Notes under the pieces: model-generated
What the model was told of the DNA's origin: nothing
The model's input: the letters and a program-made list of their open reading frames with translations, nothing else
Database searches by the model: none
Translations under genes and position numbers: made by a program
Part shown: piece by piece, positions 5,368 to 64,000 of the stretch
Numbering within the stretch: position 1 is the stretch's first letter
Layout of the letters: each line of letters starts with the position of its first letter
DNA from: Auanema rhodensis
Lineage: Eukaryota; Animalia; Nematoda
NCBI GenBank assembly: GCA_964057225.1
Contig: OZ059895.1
Coordinates: 7,564,001-7,628,000, forward strand
DNA length: 64,000 nt
Direction: 5' to 3'

Positions 5368-7124
5368 ATGGCAGAATTTGATTTAACGCAGAAGATGGTA
5401 CCTTTCTTCGATCTTCATTTGGTGATTCCTCTTCTGGAGTTCGTAGAACCTAGAAAAGTAGGATAGCTTTAAAAGCAGAGTTACGGTTCATAACATTTAG
5501 ATTTATGATGAGAAGTCTTTTATCGAAGTTCATAGAAGAGTTTTGAGAAAGACTAATATGATCGATAGCCTTATTGAAACCTATCCTGATGGCCAAATTC
5601 CCAAAGATCTTCAAGAGCGTAAAGCTGAAATTTTGAAGGAGAGAGATGCTTTCAAAGCTAAGGTAAGTGTTGCTGAAAAATTAATGATATCAAGTTTACA
5701 AAATTATTTTCTTCCTAGGTTGATCCAATTGTTGAAATTTTGGAACGCGAGGATGTAAAAGAACTTATGGAAAACACTCGTGAAAGAGATGGAAATAGCA
5801 AAATTCTTGATTTTCTTCAGCAAAACCATGAAGTATTGTTTCAGATGCCATATTTTAAGACTATATTATGTTTAGTTTACCGTTGATATGGTAGATACTC
5901 TCTTCAAATATGCCAAGTTCATGTACGAATGTGGAAACTACACTGCTGCCTCGGTAAATTAAAATTAGTAAAATTATTTTAACAATGCTTTCAGGTGTGT
6001 CTATATTACTATCGTAATCTCATCCCTCACACTGATAATAATTATCTCAATGCCTTATATGGAAAGCTTGCTAGTGAAATTCTTGTCCAGGTAATACAGT
6101 GTCAAAGAGCAATAGGATTTGTGCATTTTCTCTAGGAATGGGACCATGCACGGGACGATTTGGTCAAGCTTCGCGCTTACATCGACTCGAATCCTTTTGA
6201 TACTGAATGGGAACTTGTTCAGCAGCGTGCTTGGCTTATGCATTGGGCTTTGTTCGTATATTTTAATTATCCCAAGGGACGTGATGAGATTATTGAGATG
6301 TTCCTTAATCAACAAAACTATTTAAATACAATTCAAGTATAATGTTCTTAGTTTTTTTATATGAGCTTTGATATATTTAGGCTGTTAGTCCTCACCTTCT
6401 CCGCTATCTTGCTGTAGCTGTTGTTACTAGTAAAAATAAACAGAAAAACAGCCTCAAAGATCTCATCAAGGTTATTGATATCGTAAGTTGTTCTGTTTTA
6501 GTTCGGATTAAATGCTAACCCATTATCCAGGAACGTCATAACTATCAAGATCCAGTGACTGACTTCCTTACCTGTCTATACATCAAGTATGATTTTGATC
6601 AAGCTCAAGAAAAACTTCGTGAGTGTGAAGAAGTAAGTTGACCGTGTGTGGACTTAATTAAATTTATTTTTAAAGGTGTTATCTAACGATTTCTTCCTTA
6701 CTGCCTGTCTTCCTGATTTCCGTGAATCTGCCCGACTTCTTATTTTTGAGATGTTCTGCAGAATTCATCAGTGTATCAGTATTGAAATGCTGGCAAGAAG
6801 ATTGAATATGACTCAGGTGTAATGGAACTATTCTGATTTAATTATACATGTCTTTTGTAGGCCGAAGCTGAAAGGTGGATCGTAGATTTGATTCGTAACT
6901 ACCGCATTGAAGGAGCCAAGATTGATAGTAAATTAGGACAAGTAGTTATGGGCGTCAAAGCAGTAAGCATTCATGAACAGGTATATTTTTTTAGTTTACT
7001 TTTAAAAATGACAGAAATAAATGCTTAGGTGATGGAGAATACGAAACGTCTCACTCTCAGAACCCACACCATTGGATTGCAGTTAGAGAAGGCTCGAAAT
7101 GATCGAGGAAAAACTACGATCTAA
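5368..7124 (+). CDS. eif-3.E: Translation initiation factor 3 subunit E (INT6), multi-exon
   Basis: [89 protein letters not shown]. Acceptor ttttgtag lies just before the ATG. Confidence 0.96.
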
Positions 7125-7487
7125 ATGATATTGCGGATTCTTTTTTCTGTTTTTGTTTTAATTTGTTGGGCTGATACGCTTGTTTTCGTAATTTTTCTCT
7201 CTTTCGGACATCTGAAAAAATAAAATTCTAATCTTAATTACTGCTGATACCTTGTTGTTGATTGTTAGTTCCTACTATTATACTAAATGTATTTTCTTGT
7301 TGGAATATGAAGGTTTGTAAAAGATCGTTGAATTATAAGAAGATATGGTTTCTTTCCTGTCACATATGTATATATCATATATAATACATGAGAATAGCTC
7401 AACTTGAAAACTTATGTTTATTTTTAATGATTTAGAACTTTTTTCTAGTTTAAAAATAGAATAATTTGTGTTTTCACTTACAAAATA

Positions 7488-10400
7488 ATGACTTCATTAC
7501 GGGTAAATTAGTAGTTTTTTAACAATTTTATGAACAATTCTTTAGTTTATTCCTAAAACTGCGTATAATGTAGCTCTGGATGATTTAACTATGGCATCCA
7601 TTTTTGGAGATGACATTGAAGGAAATCAAATAACTAATGTACTTGCTCTTGAAGCTAAGCCGTTCGCTCTGATTGTTTTCGGGGAAAAATTAATGACGCG
7701 TGTAAGTAAATTTTGAAAGCTTTAGCTTTGTGGATGAAGTTCCTCTTTTAGATAAAAAATTTGCCTATTTATAAAAACATTATCAAATTATGTAAACAAT
7801 TTTTGAAATTTATAAAGTGCCAGAAGATTTCACTACGGTTTGAGTGGAAAATATTTGTTCAAATGTTATCTATTTCAGTGACGTACGATCATATCCTGCT
7901 GCTAAATCAAAAGAGAATTTTACGTTTGTTTTTCTTTCATTCTTTTGCAAAAAAGAATTTTTTATGAAGAAAGGGGATAGTAACTGAGAAATGTTTCAAT
8001 AATGTTGTAGCCTATACATATTCAAACTTATCAGCGTGGATGCAACCTTCTCAGCCGAATGTGAGTCATTTTTCCTAAAGCTTATTCAAACGATATTTCA
8101 GCTTTTTTGTAAAGCCATTTATGATAGATTGCTTAAATGGCAACCAGGGTATAGTTTCGTTGATTGTTCATTTCTACAGCATACTGAGCTTTTTGGTAAG
8201 AACTAGTTCACATGTAGCACGAGTAAAATTCAATATTAAGATTATTTCACAAGGTATTACCTGGATGATTGGGGTAAAATGGATATTACAACGAAATCTG
8301 AACTTATAAGTGCAATAGCTACGAATACATTTCGATTTAATGTTTGGTTTGTTCTAATGTCCTTGAGGTATTCGAGTTGGGACTTCTGAAAGAGCTTTGA
8401 CTTTTTTAGAAATGAGTTTTCCCTAGTATATGATACGTCAACTAAATTAGTACATTTCGGAAAACTGAAAACCAAAGTAGTTTTTCAATTTTCTGGAATA
8501 TTAACATATGTTCTTTTAGAAACTAATTTTGGCTGAAGAAAATAAAATAAAAAAGAAGCATTGCGAGTTGGCTATAGCTCAGTAAGCATGAGACTTAAAT
8601 TTAAGTTTTTGTTTCATTTTTTTCAGAATGTTGGAAAGTATTTCTCAAAACATTGAGGTTAGCAATTCATATGATCTTACACGCGGATTCATTTTAAATA
8701 ACTCTGGTATGAATTATCATGAAGTAATCAATACTAACGTTCTTTGATATTATTCAAATTTCTTATAGACGTTAAATTCACTTCAAGAACGCTTAACAAT
8801 GATCGTTGGTCCGTGCACTAGTATGATTTTCAATGTGTGGCACGTTAATTTTCCAAAATTCCAATGTATTTATAGAGACGTCCAATCTCATCTAAGCTGT
8901 GGGAAATCGTTAGGATTTTCAAAACTATAAAGGAATATCCTTTCCATTTGTTCGTTTTACTATCTATATGGTCCCTATGTTCAGTATACGCAATTTCAGG
9001 TCTGAATTTCTTTTTCCACCTTCACAAGATAAGGAATCATGCATGTGAGCTAAATCTCTTCAATATCTGAAACTTTAAGAATTTCAGAAGAAATTTCCTT
9101 TCTACTTCTGATTTGGAAAGACTGATTGTGAAATTCTTTAGGAAGAAATCTCTTCGGTTTTTTACCCCAAAAAAGAAGAGCGTATTTTATTGTTATAATT
9201 TCTGATATATATTCTCATATTTCAGGTTTTTATATTAGCTAAGAAAATAGCATTGAGATTCAATACTTGGAAATTATCAGAAGATTTTGTGGATGACACG
9301 TTGGAGAGTAGCTTTATTTATTTCGGTAAAGATGAACTTTATAACCGTATGCAGTAGTTTTCCATTTTCATGCAGGTTCCATCTTCAAATGTATACCTAA
9401 AGAACAACAGAAAAGCATTTATATGCATTCGGTTGCTTTTCATACATTCCGTTTCATGATCTATGTATTGCTAGTTACACTTCGGTAATGTTTTCATATC
9501 TCCATCTTATGCTTTTTGATATTCAAGCTCGATGTATACGACTGTTATTGGATCGAACAACACGGTCAGGTTCATTGCTGCTGGCCATTTTCCGGTATAT
9601 TCTTTACGTTGTTCTGTTGATTTTTTGTTTTTTTTTACAGAAAGTAATAGATGAAAGAGAATTACTTTCAACGGAAGTGTAAGTTTTTCTTTGATATATC
9701 TTTCTTTAAACTATCTTTTAAAGACCAAATAAAGAAACTATCGTTTCGAAACAAATTGAAAACGGAGAAGAAGATGGCAAATTAAAAAGAAAGAGAACGC
9801 GAAGCAAGTGCATTACCATGTAGGGGGTACTTCTAATTTTTTCTTTTTAAAATTGTGTTTCAGTCTTGATTCCCCGGAACCGGCTGCTAAAACCTCGAAG
9901 TTGGAACCAGCTCTTCCTTTATCGTATGTCATTTTGTTTTGAAGTAGAATGATAACGAATTTTTAAATATTTCAGAGTTAAACAAGAAGTGAATACTCAT
10001 AAATTTGATCTTAAAAAGGTTGGTGAATTATAATCTGTGTATCAAAATTATCTCTTTTAAGGTGAAACAAGAGAAAACAGACAAAACTCTTGCAACATCT
10101 GCACCTGTAACTAACCCTACTACCACTAATGCTGTAGATCTTTCTCGAGTTAAAAAGGAATCCATTAAATCAAGCTTCACAGCTGCTCCTTCTATAAATT
10201 CTGATGTATTTTTCGTTTTATATGCGATTTATAAAATTCTAATACATTTGTTTAGATTCCTGATGATAGATCTGACAAGAGTGAGGATATTACACGAGAT
10301 GTTGTAGATTTCAAACGTTTCAAAGCTGATATTGATGCTGATCCTAACATTCAAGCGGTGTATAAAACTATTTTTGGGTTTAATCTTATTTAATTTCACT

Positions 10401-10522
10401 TACTTTTCTATTATTGTTTCAGCTTAATCATTGACAATCGAGAAGCTCTTCGAACTCGTTATATAGATCTTCTGAAAGAAAATGCGAAATTAAAGGATAT
10501 TATACGGGCAATGGAAACTTAG
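7488..10522 (+). CDS. Orphan 'gene X' copy 1, ~24 exons, ~650 aa; possible degenerate ULP/SENP-like domain, NLS, SIM-like and psiKxE motifs, C-terminal coiled coil
   Basis: A continuous frame was rebuilt through GT-AG introns of about 40-65 nt, from MTSLR|FIPKTAYNVALDD to ...RYIDLLKENAKLKDIIRAMET*. The same exon structure is open in the paralog at 13223-16282. Confidence 0.75.
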
Positions 10523-10710
10523 TTGCCATAATTTACTGTTGTTGTTGTTGTTATTTTGTTTATTTTTTTTGTTTTGAAAGATACATTTATTTTCGTGGTT
10601 AGTTATATCAATAGTTTATATTGTTTTAATATTTCTGGTTTCGTTTCCTTATAATATTCAAATTCCGTTTTTCACTTTTGTTTTTTGATCAAAGTATTGA
10701 TTTCAGTAAT

Positions 10711-12537
10711 ATGCGGCGGATACATGAGGTAGTAACTAAGTCTGGAACATCTACAAGAGTTTTTAACTCTTTGAGATGCTCTTCATCATCTACAGAAACT
10801 ATTAATAGACCACCAAGTTACCGCAAGCCTCATCAACATCATAAGCCCAAGCATATGCTTCAAGAAGAATTTCCTGTAGAATTTTAGTATGTTTGAGTTT
10901 TCACATTTTTGATTTTAGAATGCTGGTGATGTTTCTGGAGCAGGGGTACGACTTTTTGACTATTATAAAACTGCTGATATGGTTAACCAACTTCCCACAA
11001 TTCAAGAGAAAATAGATTTTGTTAGTCCATATGAACGTCCTTGGACTCAAGCGGAAAAAACATGGCGCAGGTTTCTGCTAGATATTCAAGACAAATAATT
11101 AAGTTTTGATTCGCAGGGATTGGCATCCGTCTCTTATGTCTACCAGAAAGGCATGGGCCGTTCCGCAGGTCCCTTCATATTTCGATTGTTTGAAATTCTA
11201 TCAATATATCACAAAAACTAGAATTTGTGAAGAATCGTTAGATGAGCATTACAGAGATTTAGTTCCACCGACAGCTAGATTTGAGGTTTTTTTCTTTTTC
11301 AATATTTTGTAAAGAATGCTTATATAGGAAGCTATGATTGAGGCTCTTGGTCATATTATGAATTCTACTAGATTCGACAGTGAAGATGAACGAGTGAATT
11401 ATATAATTTCGACATTGATAGACGAAGGTCTGCAAAGTTTGGCTCATAATATGCCTCGTTTAGCCGATTATAGGGTTGCTCCCCTTTTTTGTAAATTTTA
11501 TAACTTTTATACTTTTAGTTGGCTTATGATGCCCAGAATGAATCATTCTGGATTAGATCTGGTTTTATGTTTCTTTACGATTTTCAAGAAATTGGAACTA
11601 GTAAAGTTATTCGTAAGCTTCATAATGCCCAAAAGTTCATAGGGGATGATAGGTTTTTTTTAAAGTTTTTTTTGTCTTTTTCATTATTCCAATTTACAGA
11701 AGGAAGCTGGGCGAATTAGCATTTGTTAGTAGAGATCAGTTCGCTGCACAAGTTCGATCAACTGAACAACCATCACCTTTATTCAGTCTTGAAAGTATAG
11801 AAAGCACCAGGGACTTGTTTTCCGACGATATAGACTTGAAAGAAGACGTTCTGTTCTCTCCTAAAGTTATGAATTTATGGCCCGATGCTGAACCGCTTTG
11901 GCAAAAACCTGGATATTTTGTCGAATCAGGAGAAACTCATTCTTACGGGCGCCTAGCAGGAAAATCGGTACATGCTATTAACGAACGGATGAGTATCTGG
12001 AATCCTGATGGTCCAGTTTCATAATTATAGACACATTACGTTTTGATTTTCTTTTAGAGGAAGAACGGTCTGCTATCTGGTTCGATTGCGCCAAAGCCCA
12101 AGCTGTATCTTCTCTCTTTACAACATTATGTGCTCAGGCTCATACTCATGGTATCTTAGACCTCTAATTCTACTGAATTATACTCTGAACTTTAGGATTT
12201 ACTCAATACACTGATGTAACGAGGCCATTCTCATCACAAATGATTCTATCCGATGGACAACAGTTTGTATTTGCTATTGGGCAACTAAATACGTTATCTA
12301 TCAATATCGATTGTGATGGTTAGAAACTCAGTTTAAAAGTTAATATTTTGTAATGTTTAAGGATTTGAAAATAATAGGACAAATTTCTGTCAAATAGAAA
12401 AGCCTTTGAACCTTTTTGATGCTTATGTTGATGGAAAGTTCTACTATCAGAAACAGGATGGTGAAAAGACTGAACTAGTTCCTGGATTAAATCGCCAGGT
12501 TCTATCACGAACATTGCAAATGATTATGAAGGACTAA
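10711..12537 (+). CDS. mrps-30: Mitochondrial ribosomal protein S30 (mL65), multi-exon
   Basis: SPYERPWTQAEKTWRRDWHPSLMSTRKAW, FYQYITKTRI, LVPPTARFE, AQNESFWIRSGFMFLYD, QAHTHGFTQYTDVTRPF. TTTCAG acceptor at 10701-10706. Confidence 0.92.
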
Positions 12538-12791
12538 GTTTTTTGTTATGTTCTTAGCATATCATTTCGTGAATTCGTGTACATACATAATTAGAATTGA
12601 AGCTTTCGATAGAAATATTGTTATTGTAGGTTATTTCAACTCTTAATCTATTTGTTGAAGTTTTTGTTATATATTCTACAGATAAATTCTACTATGTTGA
12701 AATGTATCTTTCATTTATACGCTCAAAATCGTTATATAATATTTAAGTCGTTATACATATAAACCCTGCTATTCCTCTAAGCAATTCCCTT

Positions 12792-12859
12792 TCAGAACCC
12801 ACACCATTGGATTGCAGTTAGAGAAGGCTCGAAATGATCGAGGAAAAACTACGATCTAA
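12792..12859 (+). pseudogene. Duplicated fragment encoding the last ~20 codons of eif-3.E
   Basis: Exact copy of 7057-7124 ([20 protein letters not shown]) without the upstream exons. Confidence 0.9.
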
Positions 12860-13222
12860 ATGATATTGCGGATTCTTTTTTCTGTTTTTGTTTTAATTTG
12901 TTGGGCTGATACGCTTGTTTTCGTAATTTTTCTCTCTTTCGGACATCTGAAAAAATAAAATTCTAATCTTAATTACTGCTGATACCTTGTTGTTGATTGT
13001 TAGTTCCTACTATTATACTAAATGTATTTTCTTGTTGGAATATGAAGGTTTGTAAAAGATCGTTGAATTATAAGAAGATATGGTTTCTTTCCTGTCACAT
13101 ATGTATATATCATATATAATACATGAGAATAGCTCAACTTGAAAACTTATGTTTATTTTTAATGATTTAGAACTTTTTTCTAGTTTAAAAATAGAATAAT
13201 TTGTGTTTTCACTTACAAAATA

Positions 13223-16200
13223 ATGACTTCATTACGGGTAAATTAGTAGTTTTTTAACAATTTTATGAACAATTCTTTAGTTTATTCCTAAAACTGCGTA
13301 TAATGTAGCTCTGGATGATTTAACTATGGCATCCATTTTTGGAGATGACATTGAAGGAAATCAAATAACTAATGTACTTGCTCTTGAAGCTAAGCCGTTC
13401 GCTCTGATTGTTTTCGGGGAAAAATTAATGACGCGTGTAAGTAAATTTTGAATTCTGTCTTATTCAAGCTTTAGCTTTGTGGATGAAGTTCCTCTTTTAG
13501 ATAAAGCATTTGCCTATTTATGATATTATTTTGGTTTTGTGCAAGGGCTATTTGACATTTATAAAGGGCCGGCATCTATCCTTGCAGTTGGGTTAGGTTT
13601 TAAATTCTTTTTAATTTTATCTATTTCAGTGACGTACCATCATATCCTGCTGCTAAATCAGAAGAGAATTTTAAGTTTGTTTTGTCTTTCATTCGTTTCA
13701 AAAGTATTTTTTATGAAGGAACGGGATAGTATCTGAGAAATGTTTCAATAATGTTGTAGCCTATACATATTCAAACTTATCAGCGTGGATGCAACCTTCT
13801 CAGCCGAATGTGAGTCATTTTTCCTAAAGCTTATTCAAACGATATTTCAGCTTTTTTGTAAAGCCATTTATGATAGATTGCTTAAATGGCAACCAGGGTA
13901 TAGTTTCGTTGATTTTTCATTACTAAAGCATACTGAGCTTTTTGGTAAGAACTAGTTCACATGTAGCACGAGTAAAATTCAATATTAAGATTATTTCACA
14001 AGTAAACAGCTGGATAATTGGGGTGAAATGGATATTAGAACGAAATCTGAACTTATAAGTGCAATAGCTACGAATACATTTCGATTTAATGTTTGGTTTG
14101 TTCTAATGTCCTTGAGGTATTCGAGTTGGGACTTCTGAAAGAGCTTTGACTTTTTTAGAAATGAGTTTTCCCTAGTATATGATACGTCAGCTAAATTAGT
14201 ACATTTCGGAAAACTGAAAACCAAAGTAGTTTTTCAATTTTCTGGAATATTAACATATGTTCTTTTAGAAATTGATAATATATTCCACTAGTTCTGGAAA
14301 TGCCGAAACCTATGAGTAAAAATTAAATTTTTCTTTTAAATTATAAAATTTCTCTTCAGAATACTGAAAGATATTCACCGTCACGTAAAGTATTGTAGAT
14401 CAGCTTACCATCTTACCTTTCCATTCATTTTCAACAACTTTGAAGTTGTATATCACGAGGTAATCAATAACCCACGTTCTTAATTTTATGCAAATTTCTT
14501 ACAGACGCTTACTTCACAAGGCCCATTATTAGAAATGCTTATTGGCCCATATATGACGAATTCGGTATGATTTTTCTTTTTTTCTGTTTTGTACTTAGTT
14601 TCAAGCATTTAACATCGGATGGTAGAGGATATTTCTCAGGAAAAATTTATGCCTTTGTGAGGAGAATACCATTATTTGTCACATACTTGTTCGTTTTACT
14701 ATCTATATGGTCCCTATGTTCAGTATACGCAATTTCAGGTCTGAATTTCTTTTTTCACCTTCACAAGATAAGGAATCATGCATGTGAGCTAAATCTCTTC
14801 AATATCTGAAACTTTAAGAATTTCAGAAGAAATCCCCTTTCTACTTTTGATTTGGAAAGACTGATTGGGAAGTTCTTTCAGAAATCTACGGATTCTTTTT
14901 TCTCCCCAAATAAAAAACACGTATTTTATTGTTATAATTTCTGATATATATTCTCATATTTCAGATTCCTGAATTAGCCCGAAAGATAGCAGCCAGATTT
15001 AATAATTGGAAATCATTAGAAGATTTTATTGATAAGACCTTGGAGAGTAGCTATGTCTATTTTGGTAATGATAAAGTTCATAACCTAAAGGGCTTCACTA
15101 GAAGTTTTTTTTACAGATGTCTTTGAGAGAGCCGATAAAAGCCAGCTGCCAAAGTTGTTTAAAAAGCGGTGTATGAATATTTATGCCAGTTCTCTTGCTT
15201 TACATACATTCCGTTTCATGATCTATGTATTGCTAGTTACACTTCGGTAATGTTTTCATATCTCCATCTTATGCTTTTTGATATTCAAGCTCGATGTATA
15301 CGACTGTTATTGGATCGAACAACACGGTCAGGTTCATTGGTGCTGGTCATTTTCCGGTATATTCTTTACGTTGTTCTGTTGATTTTTTGTTTTTTTATAG
15401 AATGTAATAGATGAAAAAGAATTACTTACAACTGAAGTGTAAGTTTTTCTTTGATATATCTTTCTTTAAACTATCTTTTAAAGACCAAATAAAGAAACTA
15501 TCGTTTCGAAACAAATTGAAAACGGAGAAGAAGATGGCAAATTAAAAAGAAAGAGAACGCAAAGCAAGTGCATTACCATGTAGGGGGTACTTCTAATTTT
15601 TTCTTTTCAAAATTGTGTTTCAGTCTTGATTCCCCGGAACCGGCTGCTAAAACCTCGAAGTTGGAACCAGCTCTTCCTTTATCGTATGTCATTTTGTTTT
15701 GAAGTAGAATGATAACGAATTTTTAAATATTTCAGAGTTAAACAAGAAGTGAATACTCATAAATTTGATCTTAAAAAGGTTGGTGAATTATAATCTGTGT
15801 ATCAAAATTATCTCTTTTAAGGTGAAACAAGAGAAAACAGACAATACTCTTGCAACATCTGCACCTGTAACTAACCCTGCTACCACTAATGCTGTAGATC
15901 TTTCTCGAGTTAAAAAGGAATCCATTAAATCAAGCTTCACAGCTGCTCCTTCTATAAATTCTGATGTATTTTTCGTTTTATATGCGATTTATAAAATTCT
16001 AATACATTTGTTTAGATTCCTGATGATAGATCTGACAAGAGTGAGGATATTACACGAGATGTTGTAGATTTCAAACGTTTCAAAGCTGATATTGATGCTG
16101 ATCCTAACATTCAAGCGGTGTATAAAACTATTTTTGGGTTTAATCTTATTTAATTTCACTTACTTTTCTATTATTGTTTCAGCTTAATCATTGACAATCG

Positions 16201-16282
16201 AGAAGCTCTTCGAACTCGTTATATAGATCTTCTGAAAGAAAATGCGAAATTAAAGGATATTATACGGGCAATGGAAACTTAG
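13223..16282 (+). CDS. Orphan 'gene X' copy 2 (intact paralog with a divergent central region)
   Basis: Same exon-intron architecture as copy 1. The frame stays open through divergent exons such as IKHLPIYDIILVLCKGYLTFIKGRHLSLH and ILKDIHRHVKYCRSAYHLTFPFIFNNFEVVYHE. The C-terminus is identical, with TAG at 16280-16282. Confidence 0.75.
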
Positions 16283-16409
16283 TTGCCATAATTACTGTTG
16301 TTGTTGTTGTTGTTATTTTGTTCTGTTATAATGATTTTCGGATAACAGATCTACTAATTGATCCAGAATCGTTCATATTCATAGTGCATCAAGCAGTTCC
16401 TGACTATGT

Positions 16410-16729
16410 ATCTGAAAAAATAAAATTCTAATCTTAATTACTGCTGATACCTTGTTGTTGATTGTTAGTTCCTACTATTATACTAAATGTATTTTCTTGT
16501 TGGAATATGAAGGTTTGTAAAAGATCGTTGAATTATAAGAAGATATGGTTTCTTTCCTGTCACATATGTATATATCATATATAATACATGAGAATAGCTC
16601 AACTTGAAAACTTATGTTTATTTTTAATGATTTAGAACTTTTTTCTAGTTTAAAAATAGAATAATTTGTGTTTTCACTTACAAAATAATGACTTCATTAC
16701 GGGTAAATTAGTAGTTTTTTAACAATTTT
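16410..16729 (+). repeat. Third copy (320 nt) of the eif-3.E polyA/intergenic region plus gene X exon 1
   Basis: Matches 7210-7529 (offset 9200) and 12945-13264. Includes the AATAAA and the ATG ACT TCA TTA CGG|gtaaat first exon at 16688. Confidence 0.95.
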
Positions 16730-16808
16730 TTGTAATATCTGAATTCCGCTCTTCACTTTTGTTTCTTTGATCGATATCTTTATATTATTTTATTATTATT
16801 TATTCAGA

Positions 16809-18406
16809 ATGAGAAATAAAATAAAAAAGGGTTTGGTGATATTAGCGGTTTGCATTTCTGTGATTCTATTTTGGTGCGAATTTCTGGTTTATCCATTTCA
16901 TCTATATGTGTGCTCTAAAGGTTTTGAGGGAATTAAAAAGTAAGTTATATTAAATTTATGATTTATAAGTTATATTAGAAATACCAATGATGAACTCAAT
17001 GTTATAATGATTTCTGATACTCATATTCTCGGGAAATTTAAGGGTCATTGGTTTGATAGAATTAGGAGGTTTTAATACAATAAATTTATTCTCTCTTTAC
17101 ACTGTTTTAAGAGAATGGCAAATGTCTAGCTCATTTACGCAAGCTGTGAAATGGCTCCAACCTGAAGCTGTTTTCTTTTTAGGTATTATATGTTGACTAA
17201 TGTTTTTTTATTGTTATTCAAACATTGCTACAGGAGATTTAATGGACGAAGGTCAATGGACAGATGAAAACTTATTCAATGAATATGCCGATAGATTTTT
17301 CAAAGTTTTCAATAACCAGACAGCGGGACCTACTATGTATTTTATTCCTGGAAATCATGATTTAGGATTTCATTTTGAGTAAATCTATATGTTAACAACA
17401 TTAATAATCTCTTTATAATTAGAATACATCCTGAACGTATAAAATGGTTCAAAAAACGTTTTGATGTCGACTCTGTTAATATTTTGAATATAAAAGGTAC
17501 TCATTATTTAATAATAATAACTTATTATTTATAGGATTTCCCTTTGTGACGATTAATTCTATGGCCATGCATGGTGATAAATGTAGATTATGTGCTGGTG
17601 CATTGAATTTAATGGAAACATATTCAAAAATCTTTGATTGTGCTGCTAATGAATCTTGCACATCATACCCAGAATCTGAATTAAATCGCCCTTTTATAAA
17701 GCCTATAGTTCTTCAGCATTTTCCTTTATTTAGGTAAATTAATTCATATTATTTTTATTATATTTTTTTTTGTTTCAGAACAAATGAAAATGTTTGTATG
17801 CGGGATGAAGATTTTGATGAACTAGCACCTGACCGTGATGAGCATTACCGAGAAAAGTGGGAATGTCTCTCTAAAGAATCAACTCAGTGGGTATCTTCTT
17901 ATAAGCTTGAATTTCATGTTTGTCGTAGATATATTCTGGAAAAAATCCAACCGAGAGCTGTTTTTGATGGCCATGCACATCGTGGATGTAAGAGGAAGTA
18001 AATTACTTTATATAATTTGCAATTAAGTATATTTATTTGAGATGGACTTCTCCAACTGAATTTTATGAGTACACTCAAAATTCTTTTAACTGGAGAAATA
18101 ATGACGTTCCTACAATTTTAATGGTTAGTATCGACAAAGATAGAGTAAGTTTATTGTTTTTTCAATGATTATTGACAGATAATATTTTTTTCGGCTGAAA
18201 AAGTTTTATTTCAAGATTTTTATTTTTTAAATCTTTTTCAGGTTGATGTAAAAACCTGCTATCTTCCTAGAGAATCTTTTATTTTTGTTGGATACTTTTT
18301 TATAATTCTTTTTATATTAATATTTTTTCAATACGTTTTAATGCTTTGTCTTAAAATTAAATCTCATTCTACTGATCTTCGATTACTTTCGACTAAACAC
18401 GAGTAA
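16809..18406 (+). CDS. Metallophosphoesterase 1 (MPPE1/PGAP5/Cdc1-like), multi-exon
   Basis: N-terminal TM, metallophosphoesterase motifs ISDTHILG, GDLMDEG, PGNHDLG, LQHFPL and FDGHAH, then SFNWRN and a C-terminal TM. Confidence 0.92.
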
Positions 18407-50567: not shown

Positions 50568-51453
50568 ATGGCTGGAGGCATGCATTTTCTGGTGGGAATC
50601 TCCACGAAAGATTATGTAATTCTGGCTGCCGATAAGGCATCCTTTTCTTATGGAGCCATTCTCACTGATCAAGGTTAGTATTTTATATTCAGAAGTTTAT
50701 TTTTAATGTGAAATTCATTTTTTTAAGATAATGACAAGGAGTATAGGCTTGGAGATAAGATGTCTATGATCTGTATTGGTGAAGACGGAGATGTTGATAA
50801 CTTTGGAGAATGGGTTAAGAGAAATATCCAGTTGTATTCTATCAGAAACGGTAAATTTTGTGTATATAATGTATCATATACGTAATAATATAGGTTATGA
50901 GTTATCACCAAAAGCAGCCCACCACTGGATTAGAGGAAGAATCGCCTCAGGTCTTCGTTCAAGAGTATAACATGTTCTTTCTCTTATATACCTATAACAA
51001 CATTTTGCAGGAGTCCTATTATGTTGACCTTCTTCTTGGTGGTTATGACGAGAACGAAAAGAAGGCTTTCTTAGGGTCTGTAGACTATCTTGGAAATGGA
51101 TTGCCATATCAGGTTTTTATTTTCTTAGGTAATTTCAGAATAATTGTTTTGTTTAAGCCATATTTGTTCCGTGGATTCTGTGGTCGTTTCTGTTATGCTA
51201 TTATGGACAGAGAATACAAAAAAGGTCAGCACCAGTATAAGACTTCTTTCATAAGTCGTGTTTCAGATATGAGCGAGGAACAAGGCTTGGCTCTGATGAA
51301 TAAATGTATCGCTGAGGCTAAGAAACGCTTTGTCGCCAATATTCCGGGTTATAAGGTTATTTTAGCCTTTGATATTCTTGGATATTTGTATTTTTGCAGG
51401 TTCTCATTATCGATAAGAATGGTCTTCGACACCTTCCAGATGTCATGTATTAA
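50568..51453 (+). CDS. pbs-4: Proteasome subunit beta type-2 (beta4), multi-exon
   Basis: MHFLVGISTKDYVILAAD, GEDGDVDNFGEWVKRNIQLYSIRNGYELSPKAAHHWIR, YYVDLLLGGYD, CIAEAKKRFVAN. Confidence 0.95.
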
Positions 51454-51615
51454 ATCATAACGATATATTGAAGTCCGGTAATTTCAAACGTGTTGGCCCC
51501 TATTATGTATCCCCGATGTTTCCTTTAAATTATTTATTGTTACTTTCAACACGGTTTCATAAATCATCTCTTCACCCGTGTGTGTATATCAAACTACTTC
51601 AGAAACTAGACAAAA

Positions 51616-53481: not shown

Positions 53482-56114
53482 TTACGATTCTCTTAGATCA
53501 ATTGATAGCTTTCCTGTTGTTTTCTCAGTGCTCTGTGGAATTTCTCCGGAAAATATAATTAAATCATCAACCGACACCTAAAAATGAAGTTTAAACTGTT
53601 GTTTTAAGAATATTAGTCGTACCGACAAATGCCGCACTCCTCGCTGAGGTGTTTTTCTATAATTATAAATAACCATTTTGGAAACATAGGTAGGAACATC
53701 AAAAATGAAAAAAATTCTGGCGCATCGATTTGGTAATAAAGGTGTAAGCCACATGTTGCTTGGGCTATAACATATTTATATTATAGAAATAAAAATATTT
53801 TGTTTTAAGTGCAAATACGATTATTATATAAAAAAAAAGATTAGAATCCTTACTTATCCGTATCATTCTTCCGGTTTATTAAATTTTCACTTGTTCTTGG
53901 ATCATTCTCTACTGACGGCAAAATGTTAACAGATTCCGGAAAAGCTGCCAAGTCTTTAAAATAGAAAATACATATCACATGATATAGATAATTAAATAAA
54001 GCATACTATGAGTTTTAATCCGTATAAGTTCATCTTTACGATTGTACAGCTCTATACCATTTAAGCCTATGTAAAATTCATCTCCCCAAGTTGACAGTAA
54101 ACGAATTTGAAAAATAACTGAAAATATTAAAAATTAAAAAAAAATTATAAATATTGTAAGTTACATCCGCTAATACTGAAGGTACTAGGGCGTAGTTGTG
54201 TAGGACGAGCAAATACAGGAGAATCAAATATGATATCTTGAACAAAATCAAAATAAACAAATCCTATAAATCAATTATATGTAGAAAATTATATATAATT
54301 AAACAAAAATACCAGGAGCCTTTCTTAATAAAACATTTGATATTGCTAATTTGCCATTTATATAAATATTCATCTGGCGAACTCCGGCATAAGACATTTC
54401 AGAAGAAGCATTATAATTCCAGATTGATAATCCTTTATAATATTATAAACATTGTATATTAAGGATAATTAAAACCTTGCAAGTTTATTGGTTTATTGAA
54501 TGTTAACGTGATAGTTGGCAACTTTTTCCTGGTGTTGTCCCAACTAGTTAGCCACATATCCGTGATATTTCGTGTTAAATTTCGACCATTTAATAAGCTA
54601 TAACATTGAAATCATTGAGAAATTCAAATAGAAACAGAAATATAAATTACGTTTGTACTGAGTCACTGCCATTGGATGCACTTATAACTGCAATATCAGA
54701 GCTTATTGAACGTCCTTTATGTCCAATAAGTTCTAAACCTGCCAGACCAATCGAATCTGGATGACCCCAGTTAGAATAAAGTTCCAAATGTAAAACTAAA
54801 CATCGTTATATTATTCTGCTTAATACCTTATATAAGGAATACCTTTGACTTTACATTCTGATTGATCTGAATCCTCAGCAGTATTGGAGTTATTTGTTTG
54901 TTCGTTCAAATGAAGAGTCGATATTGAAGAAAACTCAGTTGTCGATGGTCGATATGGAGTAAGTTGTAGTGTTGTTTCAGGATCTGAAGATTCTGTTTAA
55001 ATAAATAGAAAATCAAGTTGTATATCAAATAAATCTTTAACTTAATATCATATATATCATAATACCTGTATTTAAAACATCATTATTGAGAGATTCTTCA
55101 AATGGTGTCGTCAATAAGCAAACATCATTTTCTGCAATTCTTTCCAAAATTGCTTCATCTGTTGTAAAGAGAACTGTCTGTAATGTTTAATAATACAAAA
55201 TTGAAAAATAAGGTATATGCATACATCTCCCATTGGCTCGATTTCCTCATTTTTTGTGTACGATGGATTGATTTCGCCACGGAAAATCAGAATATCATCT
55301 AAACAGATTTCAAGATCCCTCACACCAATCTGAGCTCTAACACGAGATTCGCTGTAATTCTGAAATTGAAAAGAACGTAATGGATGAGAATAATATATAT
55401 ATACCCATATTCGTATCATTGCAATACGTACAGTTTCACGTAGAAGCAATGTAACAGTTACTTGTTCATTTTCCTGCTTTTCTGCTTTCCACATTTTGTG
55501 TCGATCAGTACAAAAATAATTTTCAACTACTAAACTGTTGGGATCTCCTACAAAGTTGGAGACAGTGCTTGAAACCTGAAAATAAAGTTTAAGAGTTATA
55601 AAGTATTCTCTAAAGAACCTCAACGATTTCAGCTCTTTTGCCTGTATGTCCAAATATTTCAATTCCATTCAATCCAATATAAACATTATCTCCCCAGTTT
55701 GTTATTAAGTATAATACCAAGCGTTTACCAGTAGGTAGTTCAGGGATTTCACTGCAAATTACTTCATGAACGGCAAATATATTATAGTTGATGATTTAAA
55801 TATTTCCTTTATATTGAAAATGATAGAATTATAATAAAAGTGCTTTAGACTACTGTAACTTTCAGGAAGAAAATATAAGAATTTGTCATTTCTTTGATAG
55901 TTATCGTAATCAAGTCAATCTCTGGCTTTGTATGTGAGATAATACTCAAATTCTGATTCATAACAACTAGTAAAAGTACAAATTGAACGAAATGATCAAG
56001 TTTTTAATAAATAAATTTACAAAAATAAAAAAAAACAATAAGACAAACATACAAAGGTACTTCTATTGCATCGCCTTCAGTTATTATAGCTCCTTCAGCT
56101 GTGATTTGGTTCAT
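53482..56114 (-). CDS. KATNIP/KIAA0556 (DUF4457) ciliary katanin-interacting protein homolog, multi-exon
   Basis: Repeated modules EIPELPTGKRLVLYLITNWGDNVYIGLNGIEIF, MIRIWNYSESRVRAQIGVR, LYSNWGHPDSIGLAGLEL and YNYRKTPQRGVRHL. In-frame ATG at 56114 (MNQITAEG). Confidence 0.88.
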
Positions 56115-62127: not shown

Positions 62128-64000
62128 TTATAACAAGTTTGAAAACCATGTATCAACTTTACGGTATACTTCACTTTCAGAAAAATTAATCTGAAAATAT
62201 GTGTTTATTAAATATAAAAATTACAAATAACCTGTAAGAAAAGACGTAATCCTTCTGTCAATACTTGGTTCTTTTCCGGGGAAAGCGCTGGAGTAAAAAT
62301 ACGGCGCAACTTTCCTTCTGGACAGTCTTCCAATAAAACAAAAACATGTCTTATTACACTCGAAATAAAGGAGTTAATAGAACCCCATTCAACAACCTAA
62401 GAAATAATAAATAATTCTGGATAATTTAAAAAAAAATTTCGAACCTTCAGAACTGTAATGGATAAAACTTCATTTCGAATCAAAATATGTAATAGAGACG
62501 CCAGATGTGTTCGCTGTTTTTTGGAAAGGTTATTACATTCCCTTATTCTATCCCATAAAGCATATTGAGAGGTTATCTTAAAATTTAAAATAACCCAGTT
62601 AAAAACATTACGACTTACTTTAAACTTCCGATCAAACTCGCAAAATCGAGAAATAAGTGTCGCATAATATGGGTTATATGATTTTTCTTTTAGCATCATG
62701 TGGATAATTACATAAATAATCTCTCTTTCTTGTTGTCCTGGAAGAAAAAAAAGTAAATATGTAGAATTTAGCAAAAACCTTTCAATGAAAGCCTCAATAA
62801 CTTCTCAAATGCTTCATCCTCTCCTGATGAAACCGCTGAAATTAAAAACATTTTATCGAAATCTTAAAAACTAAAAAAACCAATTGAACAGAATATATTT
62901 TTTCGAATAACAGTATTCATTTTAGCTTTTGCAGCTAGCTCTAAAACTTCGTTGGGGAACGAAAGAGCATTAGTTATTTTCTTGTTATCTGTAGCTAAGA
63001 CAGAGTAAGAATCTGATGGCAATCTGAACGCTGAACCAACAATCCACCTAGAACAAATTCAATGTCTTAAATATTATTTTACTTAGCTACCATCTTCCTC
63101 TATCTGTAGCATGGAGCAAATCATCAACACCCATTCCTAGCTCTTGTGAAATCTCAGTTTTTTCTTCTAAGCCCAGAGGATTAATATTAATAACAACTTA
63201 GTTTTAACAAACGTTTCAATAGTCCTCGGAACATTTTATAATGAGATTCAAACATAGAATAATCAATATGTCCTGGAGCAGCTTTTTTCAAAGCAAGTAT
63301 ATTTTCTGCTATAAATTGAGCACGAGATCTAAAAAAAATAATACTAAAAACATGAAAATAAATACAATTACATTTCGACTAAAGGAGAGTTTTGATACTG
63401 AATATGAATTTGACTCAAAATTTCAGCAAATGGTACCCAACAACATCTTTTAGCAGTTTTATAAACATCTGAATATATAAAAGTTAAAAAATGGAAATAT
63501 ACTTGAAAACCATACATGAAGCAAATGTATAAATAATTTGTAAGTTATCAATATCCAAGTTATCACTTAAATTTTTAAGAATATCTATAGCAAATTCAGG
63601 TTTCACAATCTATAATTAATAAACATATCTGAAATGAAAAAAGAAACAACCTTGTAGTTTATTATGTGAGATAATGTAATAGTCTTATTTTCAACGGACT
63701 TGTCATCTTGTACTTTATCAGTTTTTATAACCTTAATATAATCGCAAACAAAATATTCAACGAAATGAGATGCTAAAATAGAAATTTAACTTATACATTT
63801 ACTAACAAATTATTTGAACATACATATCTCTGTATCCACAATTCCATGGATTAAAGCTAGAAACATTCCATATGTTGATAGCATATTATCTGGCAAACGA
63901 TATGGAGCTCCAATCATTTTCCATAATACTGTAGCCAAGCTGGATTTGACATCTATAAAAACAAATTTTTGGGGAAATAAATAAATCAGAATAACCATTT
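62128..64000 (-). CDS. NOM1/Sgd1 nucleolar MIF4G-MA3 protein (3' part)
   Basis: DDLLHATDRGRWWIVGSAF, AKAKMNTVIRKNIFCS, QQEREIIYVIIHMMLKEKSYNPYY, QYALWDR. Stop TAA at 62130-62128. Confidence 0.92.

What the first reader, a model, noticed from the sequence alone, without database searches (positions are those of the whole stretch)
7879..8476. All codon differences between X1 and X2 in this block change the amino acid while adjacent introns are identical
Seen: comparing 7879-8476 with ~13630-14225, I count 15 differing codons, all replacements (R/P, K/E, T/K, K/N, T/S, C/F, F/L, Q/K, R/S, Y/K, Y/Q, D/N, K/E, T/R, T/A), and none purely synonymous. The introns starting near 8061, 8195, 8368 and 8477 are letter-for-letter identical between copies. 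Intron 9182-9225 is also identical although its flanking exons differ strongly (VKFFRKKSLRFFTPKKKS vs GKFFQKSTDSFFSPNKKH). Inference: diversifying selection acting despite gene conversion.
Basis: partly seen in the sequence, partly recalled or inferred. Interest (0 to 1): 0.75.

Follow-up and report, generated by a model that had tools for sequence, protein, structure and literature searches.

The report
Gene-conversion mosaic between two tandem worm genes
Two neighbouring copies of an uncharacterised nematode gene are kept largely identical by copying between them, while several coding exons stay different right up to their edges. This is a clean example of a known process, and the claim of positive selection is only weakly supported.

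Summary
Under a 23-exon model that gives complete reading frames in both copies (X1 635 aa, X2 649 aa), block 7879-8476 has 15 differing codons. All 15 change the amino acid. Introns 8061-8101, 8196-8240, 8368-8409, 8477-8519 and 9182-9225 are identical.

Gene conversion is strongly supported. Synonymous divergence is about 0.011 in the homogenised exons and 0.57-2.3 in exons E2, E8-E11 and E13-E15. Thirteen of 22 introns are identical. The 44-base intron lies between exons with dS about 0.6, which chance would give with P about 1e-10. Four of six sharp island edges lie within 5 bases of a splice junction (P=0.006), which points to selection against homogenising those exons.

Diversifying selection is not established. 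In the block, omega is 3.6-4.6 but not significantly above 1 (LRT p=0.15; replacement versus synonymous p=0.14). The old islands have omega 0.43, which indicates purifying selection. Only a post hoc sub-block, 7984-8523, is significant: 12 replacement differences against 0 at 245 silent or intronic sites (p=0.0007).

No protein family or third copy was found. Other reports from this scan note gene-conversion mosaics elsewhere in this genome. This is a new member of a known kind, like the opsin case and the Teshima-Innan model.

The parts
7591..10522 (+). Gene X1: 23 exons, 635 codons, stop TAG at 10520-10522. Exons: 7591-7701, 7752-7837, 7879-7923, 7970-8060, 8102-8195, 8241-8367, 8410-8476, 8520-8581, 8627-8723, 8769-8804, 8876-8949, 9000-9044, 9088-9181, 9226-9325, 9376-9484, 9528-9594, 9641-9678, 9724-9819, 9864-9923, 9976-10018, 10062-10205, 10256-10377, 10423-10522.
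   Evidence: Hand- and DP-built model. All introns are GT-AG and 41-71 bases long, and the reading frame is complete. E10 and E11 are the least certain exons. There is no cDNA evidence.
13326..16282 (+). Gene X2: the same 23-exon structure, 649 codons. Exons: 13326-13436, 13501-13586, 13630-13674, 13719-13809, 13851-13944, 13990-14116, 14159-14225, 14269-14315, 14360-14459, 14505-14564, 14606-14688, 14739-14783, 14827-14920, 14965-15064, 15117-15246, 15290-15356, 15401-15438, 15484-15579, 15624-15683, 15736-15778, 15822-15965, 16016-16137, 16183-16282.
   Evidence: The reading frame is complete using homologous splice sites. All exon length differences from X1 are multiples of three (15, 3, 24, 9, 21). 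This is partly by construction.
7879..8476 (+).
   Evidence: Sd 1.0, Nd 17.0, dN 0.053, dS 0.011; omega 3.6, LRT p=0.146.
7924..7969 (+). Intron 3, inside the block. It is not identical between the copies (3 substitutions, indels of 1 and 3 bases). It is part of a small divergence island, 7887-7983, that spans exon, intron and exon.
8061..8519 (+). Introns I4 (8061-8101), I5 (8196-8240), I6 (8368-8409) and I7 (8477-8519): 171 bases with 0 differences. The exons between them carry 12 replacement differences.
7752..7862 (+). Old divergence island 1: exon 2 (66% identity, dS 1.1, dN 0.34) and most of intron 2. The island begins 5 bases into exon 2.
8524..8947 (+). Old divergence island 2: exons 8-11 and introns 8-10 (27-71% identity, dS saturated). 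It begins 4 bases into exon 8 and ends 2 bases before the exon 11 donor site.
9128..9440 (+). Old divergence island 3: the 3' part of exon 13, exon 14, intron 14 and the 5' half of exon 15 (58-74% identity; dS 0.57-0.75; omega 0.34-0.50). It is interrupted by the identical intron 13.
9182..9225 (+). Intron 13: 44 bases, identical in both copies. The bases next to it in both flanking exons differ. The identical run is 9181-9225.
   Evidence: P about 1e-10 given the flanking neutral divergence.
7051..7590 (+). Duplicated 5' flank, identical to 12786-13325. It starts inside the last coding exon of the upstream eIF3e-like gene.
   Evidence: (0 differences in 7080-7590)
16410..16732 (+). Third copy of a 323-base upstream segment (matching 7210-7532 and 12945-13267), lying just before the metallophosphoesterase gene.
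10678..12540 (+). Mitochondrial ribosomal protein S30 (PDCD9) gene, lying between X1 and X2. It is not duplicated.

Best explanation
X1 and X2 are two old tandem copies of a 23-exon nematode gene of unknown function. They sit on one strand among housekeeping genes, in the order eIF3e, X1, mrps-30, X2, metallophosphoesterase. Recurrent copying between the two loci (interlocus gene conversion) has erased nearly all differences in the 5' flank, most introns and the 3' third of the gene. Three islands keep ancient divergence: exon 2, exons 8-11, and exons 13-15. The islands begin or end within a few bases of exon edges, and a 44-base intron inside one island is perfectly homogenised. Conversion tracts that overwrite those coding segments are therefore most likely removed by selection, while tracts confined to neutral intron sequence can fix. 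This implies the two proteins have diverged in function in those segments. This fits either selected retention or new adaptive replacements, but the excess is not statistically secure. What is shown: the mosaic, its bimodal divergence, and the coincidence of island edges with exon edges. What is inferred: conversion as the process, and selection as the cause of the exon-bounded islands.
For: The duplicate and its mosaic identity are shown. The per-feature table shows 13 of 22 introns at 100% identity, E2 at 66%, E8-E11 at 27-57%, E13 and E14 at 73-74%, and I13 at 100%. By Nei-Gojobori, dS is 0.011 in the low-divergence exons and 0.57-2.3 in the islands. The codon model gives omega 0.43 (below 1, p=0.02) for E2, E13 and E14, so these are real coding exons under constraint and are old. 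Four of six sharp island edges lie within 5 bases of a splice junction, with the intron always on the identical side (p=0.006). The chance of I13 being identical is about 1e-10. The ratio of replacement to synonymous differences is higher in the block than in the old exons (17:1 against 78:37, p=0.023). In 7984-8523 there are 12 replacement differences against 0 at 245 silent plus intron sites (p=0.0007). No third copy exists in the 181 Mb genome by DNA search or by three exon peptides. The pattern matches the described model of divergence peaks kept by selection under gene conversion, with opsin introns homogenised and exon 5 divergent (PMC3924837).
Against: There is no outgroup, population sample or cDNA, so conversion is inferred from one genome. 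Introns 2, 3, 8-10 and 14 are diverged, so 'introns identical, exons different' is not general. One of the four junction-coincident edges depends on the least certain splice site, the exon 11 donor at 8950. Without it the count is 3 of 6 by my rough estimate, which would be only borderline; I did not re-run the simulation for that case. The tests on the block are non-significant by codon criteria (p=0.14-0.15), and the significant sub-block test was defined after seeing the data. Clustered changes (5 in 7 bases at 8254-8260; 3 in 12 bases at 8166-8177) may be single multi-nucleotide events, which inflate dN/dS.
Confidence: 0.7

Rival explanations
1. One reading: ongoing diversifying (positive) selection drives new amino-acid replacements in E3-E7 and elsewhere, faster than gene conversion can erase them, as in a conflict or recognition gene.
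For: In the block all 15 differing codons are replacements, and 10 of the 15 change charge. Omega is estimated at 3.6-4.6. The synonymous sites interleaved among the replaced codons at 8252-8290 are all unchanged (0 of about 6.3 sites against 8 replacement changes). That fits new replacements on a recently homogenised background better than retained old differences. In 7984-8523, replacement differences against silent plus intron sites give p=0.0007.
Against: The LRT for omega above 1 gives p=0.146 for the block and 0.27 for all low-divergence exons. Replacement versus synonymous differences give p=0.14. With intron 3 included, exons are no more different than introns (p=0.39). The 3' homogenised part has omega about 1. 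The strongly different exons have omega 0.3-0.5 with high dS, so they are old and constrained. Clustered multi-nucleotide changes can mimic positive selection.
Confidence: 0.3
2. A neutral mosaic: gene conversion with random tract ends, followed by escape of some segments once they had diverged too far to pair. On this view the coincidence with exon edges is chance and no selection acts on the differences.
For: Several introns inside or beside islands are as diverged as the silent sites (I14 58%, I2 65%, I8 56%). The small island 7887-7983 spans an intron. The tests on the block are weak.
Against: Neutral escape should start in introns, not exons. Island edges fall within 5 bases of splice junctions in 4 of 6 cases, always with the intron on the identical side (p=0.006). 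I13 is identical between two diverged exons. The replacement-to-synonymous ratio of residual differences is higher than in the old segments (p=0.023).
Confidence: 0.15
3. An artefact: the two copies, or their identical stretches, were produced by assembly or polishing, for example reads mapped across copies.
For: Very long tracts are perfectly identical (at least 511 bases upstream and 403 bases at the 3' end). Polishing of tandem repeats could in principle produce this.
Against: Both copies are complete, have intact splice sites, and keep open frames through 25-70% diverged segments. Polishing errors would not follow exon edges or spare replacement sites. Other reports from this scan describe similar mosaics at many other loci of this genome, some reportedly shared with other species (I did not check these).
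Confidence: 0.04

Closest known systems
Primate red/green opsin genes, and the Teshima-Innan model of divergence peaks kept by selection under interlocus gene conversion (reviewed in PMC3924837)
   Same: Tandem paralogs with introns and flanks homogenised by conversion. Divergence is confined to particular exons and falls to near zero in the flanking introns. The peaks are read as targets of selection against homogenisation.
   Different: Here there are three large islands with saturated silent sites instead of one small peak. The edges are sharp to within a few bases of splice sites. One 44-base intron is homogenised inside an island. The functional sites are unknown, and no orthologue comparison is available.
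Human RHD/RHCE (Innan 2003 two-locus conversion model with selection; cited in PMC3924837)
   Same: Duplicated genes under frequent conversion, with one exon region of elevated divergence attributed to selection.
   Different: In that case the antigenic function is known and population data exist. Here there is a single genome and no known function.
Gene families with accelerated exons and conserved introns (snake-venom PLA2, conotoxins, NPIP/morpheus), from my own knowledge
   Same: Exons differ more than the neighbouring introns, and in one block nearly all differences are replacements.
   Different: In those families dN exceeds dS across the exons and the introns are uniformly conserved. 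Here the strongly different exons have omega 0.3-0.5 with high dS, and several introns are as diverged as the silent sites.
Other gene-conversion mosaics reported by this scan in the same genome (pha-4, myosin, BarH, Vms1 pairs)
   Same: Neighbouring paralogs with stretches made identical, introns included, next to anciently different stretches.
   Different: Those are known gene families. X has no recognisable family, and its islands follow exon edges unusually closely. I did not re-examine those loci.

Membership tests
Interlocus gene-conversion mosaic with selection-maintained divergence peaks | Strongly heterogeneous divergence along paralogs (near-identical tracts next to old tracts) | tested here: met
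   dS is 0.011 in the homogenised exons and 0.57-2.3 in the islands; identical runs of 125-403 bases occur within the gene, and the 5' flank 7080-7590 has no differences
Interlocus gene-conversion mosaic with selection-maintained divergence peaks | Peaks centred on coding sequence, with flanking non-coding sequence homogenised | tested here: met
   Four of six sharp edges lie within 5 bases of a splice junction, with the intron on the identical side (p=0.006); I13 is identical inside an island
Interlocus gene-conversion mosaic with selection-maintained divergence peaks | In homogenised parts, paralogs are closer to each other than to orthologues; in peaks, the reverse | not testable with these tools
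   No orthologue was found: word search and 1.84 billion representatives with exon 6 were both blank. The genome collections offered are prokaryotic.
Positive (diversifying) selection by codon criteria | dN/dS significantly above 1 | tested here: not met
   For the block, omega is 3.6 with LRT p=0.146; for all low-divergence exons, omega 1.9 with p=0.27; for the old exons, omega 0.43. Fisher test of replacement versus synonymous differences gives p=0.14.
Positive (diversifying) selection by codon criteria | Replacement differences exceed those at a neutral reference (silent sites plus introns) | tested here: inconclusive
   p=0.0007 for 7984-8523, a sub-block chosen post hoc; p=0.15 for the whole block with intron 3 included
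Positive (diversifying) selection by codon criteria | Site models or a McDonald-Kreitman test with orthologues or population samples | not testable with these tools
   Only two sequences are available
Peptidase C48 (ULP1/SENP)-like domain (a lead from another first-reader note) | Match to the family profile PF02902 | tested here: not met
   A six-frame search of the whole genome with PF02902 lists seven matches, all on other contigs and none at X. Ten X1 exons scanned against Pfam at E up to 10 gave no family. Exon-sized queries have little power, so a remote or degenerate domain is not excluded.
Accelerated-exon / conserved-intron families (venom PLA2 type) | dN at or above dS across the variable exons, with uniformly conserved introns | tested here: not met
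   The variable exons E2, E13 and E14 have omega 0.43; introns 2, 8-10 and 14 are only 27-71% identical

The most novel reading that the evidence does not exclude
X1 and X2 are an orphan conflict or recognition gene pair, for example a self/non-self or toxin-antidote-like system carried in a housekeeping gene cluster. On this reading, exon-limited variation is actively driven by positive selection, and short-tract gene conversion both homogenises introns and shuffles exon variants between the copies.
Probability: 0.12. Interest if true: 0.7.

Novelty: new member of a known kind. Interest (0 to 1): 0.4.

Why it matters
This is an unusually sharp natural example of the balance between gene conversion and selection. 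A 44-base intron is identical between exons whose silent sites are about 40% different, and island edges sit within a few bases of splice sites. If strains or sister species confirm it, the islands would mark which parts of an uncharacterised protein carry the functional difference between the copies. The locus would also bound how short effective conversion tracts can be in this nematode. It does not reveal a new process.

Tried and rejected
- **First gene models.** A first-pass automatic model gave inconsistent exons in the two copies. I replaced it with a model using homologous splice sites in both copies. A model splicing exon 1 straight to 7879 hits an immediate TGA and was rejected.
- **Third paralog as donor of the divergent segments.** None was found, by DNA or by exon peptides E6, E22 and X2-E15.
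- **Protein family.** Pfam per exon gave nothing. PF02902 over the genome gave no match at X. PDB sequence searches with three exons gave nothing meaningful. The word-index protein search with exon 6 was blank, but its length window excludes full-length proteins. phmmer of exon 6 against 1.84 billion representatives gave 0 hits; this is a 41-residue query, so only relatives above roughly 55% identity would show.
- **RNA families.** Rfam over the window gave nothing, so a conserved intronic RNA does not explain the identical introns.
- **cDNA-templated exon replacement.** I considered this and rejected it. It would remove introns rather than leave them in place, and it does not explain the diverged introns.
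- **Joined spliced protein.** It was used only inside local scripts for alignment and dN/dS.
- **Species name.** It could not be established. Other reports of this scan place the genome near Pristionchus; I did not check this.

Full report
**What the sequence is.** The window has 32% G+C, introns of 41-71 bases ending in tttcag-like acceptors, and tightly packed same-strand genes. It is nematode DNA from a 181 Mb assembly. A self-comparison shows a tandem duplicate, 7051-10560 against 12786-16322. A third copy of a 323-base upstream piece lies at 16410-16732. Identity along the duplicate is a mosaic. Stretches are 100% identical (7080-7680, about 9900-10520). Stretches are near-identical (7863-8523, 8950-9128, 9431-9900). 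Others are only 35-76% identical (7757-7862, 8524-8947, 9129-9440).

**Gene model.** No cDNA or homologue was available, so I built the model from splice signals and from the requirement that both copies stay open.
- The final model has 23 exons, all GT-AG. It gives a complete 635-codon frame in X1 (7591-10522) and a 649-codon frame in X2 (13326-16282), using homologous splice sites.
- Support for the frames comes from the diverged exons E2, E13 and E14, which have omega 0.43, significantly below 1. In addition, all exon length differences between the copies are multiples of three, although this is partly by construction.
- Exons 10 and 11 are the least certain.
- Searches were made exon by exon, by reference.

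**Check of the observation.** It is correct.
- Introns 8061-8101, 8196-8240, 8368-8409 and 8477-8519 are identical (0 of 171 bases). Intron 9182-9225 is identical (0 of 44), and the exon bases on both sides of it differ.
It carries 3 substitutions and two indels and belongs to a small island, 7887-7983, that spans exon, intron and exon.

**Is it more than chance?**

| Test | Result |
|---|---|
| Block E3-E7, Nei-Gojobori | dN 0.053, dS 0.011, omega 4.6 |
| Block E3-E7, codon likelihood model | omega 3.6, LRT against omega=1 p=0.146 |
| Block, replacement vs synonymous | Fisher p=0.14; binomial p=0.085 |
| Exons vs introns, intron 3 excluded | p=0.004 |
| Exons vs introns, intron 3 included | p=0.39 |
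| Sub-block 7984-8523 (chosen after seeing the data) | 12 replacement differences at 292 sites vs 0 at 245 silent plus intron sites, p=0.0007 |
| Homogenised 3' part | omega about 1 |

Clustered changes also weaken it: 5 changes in 7 bases at 8254-8260 and 3 in 12 bases at 8166-8177 may each be a single mutational event.

**The larger pattern.**
- Divergence is bimodal. dS is about 0.011 in the homogenised exons, against 1.1 in E2, 0.57-0.75 in E13-E15, and saturation in E8-E11. Omega in these islands is 0.3-0.5.
- Diverged introns inside the islands (I2 65%, I8 56%, I14 58%) match the silent-site divergence. The islands are therefore old sequence, not recent bursts of change.
- Thirteen of 22 introns are 100% identical.
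- Intron 13 lies between exons with about 40% silent-site difference. Forty-four identical bases there has a chance probability of about 1e-10.
- No third copy exists in the genome that could have donated the divergent segments.
- The simplest account is an old duplication whose copies are repeatedly homogenised by interlocus gene conversion.

**Where the islands end.** I segmented the alignment objectively, taking identical runs of at least 40 bases that abut at least 5 differences in the next 20 bases. Four of six such edges lie within 5 bases of a splice junction, where 16% is expected (P=0.006). In every one of those cases the intron is the identical side.
- The island edges fall 4 bases into exon 8 and 2 bases before the exon 11 donor.
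- They also fall on both sides of intron 13.
- A further edge, 5 bases into exon 2, is just as close to a junction but did not pass the density criterion.

Neutral escape from conversion should begin in introns. Edges at exon boundaries instead imply that tracts overwriting these coding segments are removed by selection. This is selection against homogenisation, meaning functional divergence of the two proteins. It is not the same as fast diversifying evolution.

One of the four edges depends on the uncertain exon 11 donor. Without it the count is 3 of 6 by my rough estimate, which would be only borderline; I did not re-run the simulation for that case.

Homogenising a 44-base intron needs short tracts. 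Tracts of a few tens of bases are known from non-crossover events in other animals (my own knowledge).

**The block itself.** The ratio of replacement to synonymous differences is 17:1 in the block and 78:37 in the old exons (p=0.023). The silent sites interleaved among the replaced codons at 8252-8290 are all unchanged. That fits replacements arising after homogenisation, or extremely fine-scale conversion with selective retention. It remains possible, at about 0.3, but is unproven.

**What X is.** This is unknown.
- Ten exons gave no Pfam family at E up to 10.
- A genome-wide six-frame search with Peptidase_C48, a lead from another first-reader note, found seven matches on other contigs and none at X.
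- Three exons gave nothing meaningful against PDB sequences.
- Exon 6 found nothing in the word-index search or among 1.84 billion representative proteins. Exon-sized queries are weak, so this shows only that no close relative is on record.
- The predicted proteins have a basic stretch in exon 18, a Ser/Thr/Pro-rich stretch in exon 21, and a heptad-like C-terminal exon (by eye).

**Context.** All neighbours are on the + strand.
- Upstream lies an eIF3 subunit E-like gene; I recognised this by eye from the ORF translations.
- Between the copies lies mitochondrial ribosomal protein S30.
- After X2 lies a calcineurin-like metallophosphoesterase.
- From memory, C. elegans has mrps-30, eif-3.E and an MPPE1 homologue (B0511.13) on cosmid B0511. 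Papers on GPI anchors mention B0511.13, but I did not open them.
- The arrangement looks operon-like, but that was not tested.

**Comparison with what is known.** The pattern is the one described for primate red/green opsins and modelled by Teshima and Innan. Conversion keeps introns and flanks alike, while selection holds a peak of divergence over functionally important exon sites (PMC3924837). It does not fit the venom-type accelerated-exon families, because the variable exons here have dN well below dS. Other reports from this scan describe conversion mosaics at several other loci of the same genome (I did not check them). So this is one more instance, notable for how exactly the islands follow exon edges.

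**Verdict.**
- Gene conversion is strongly supported.
- Selection against homogenising certain exons is probable.
- Positive diversifying selection is not demonstrated.
- This is a new member of a known kind, of moderate interest.

Noticed in passing
7210-7532, 12945-13267, 16410-16732: A 323-base non-coding segment occurs three times, identical in the two X copies and with one mismatch in the third. Each copy lies just upstream of a gene (X1, X2 and the metallophosphoesterase). Similarity to the third copy stops about 58 bases before the X start codon. It is not repeated elsewhere in the genome. It could be a shared promoter or inter-cistronic element, or a duplication remnant kept identical by conversion.
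   Followed up: partly
7051-7123 and 12786-12858: The duplicated unit starts inside the last coding exon of the upstream eIF3e-like gene. A copy of about 73 bases of that gene's C-terminal coding sequence therefore sits downstream of the mrps-30 gene.
   Followed up: no
5543-18170: A same-strand, tightly spaced cluster runs eIF3e-like, X1, mrps-30 (PDCD9), X2, metallophosphoesterase, with gaps of about 190-800 bases. It looks operon-like. From memory, it resembles the gene content of C. elegans cosmid B0511.
   Followed up: partly
7879-7923: Exon 3 is 45 bases long, a multiple of three. Skipping it would keep the frame, so it could be a cassette exon. It lies in the small island 7887-7983.
   Followed up: no
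10530-10560 and 16290-16322: The 3' end of the duplicated unit coincides with a short (TGT)n-type microsatellite just after the X stop codon. Its length differs between the two copies.
   Followed up: no
50897-51457, 55114-55668 (-), 62400-62774 (-): Other exon-sized ORFs in the window match Proteasome subunit, DUF4457/XRCC1_N and MA3 domains. They look like ordinary housekeeping genes.
   Followed up: no
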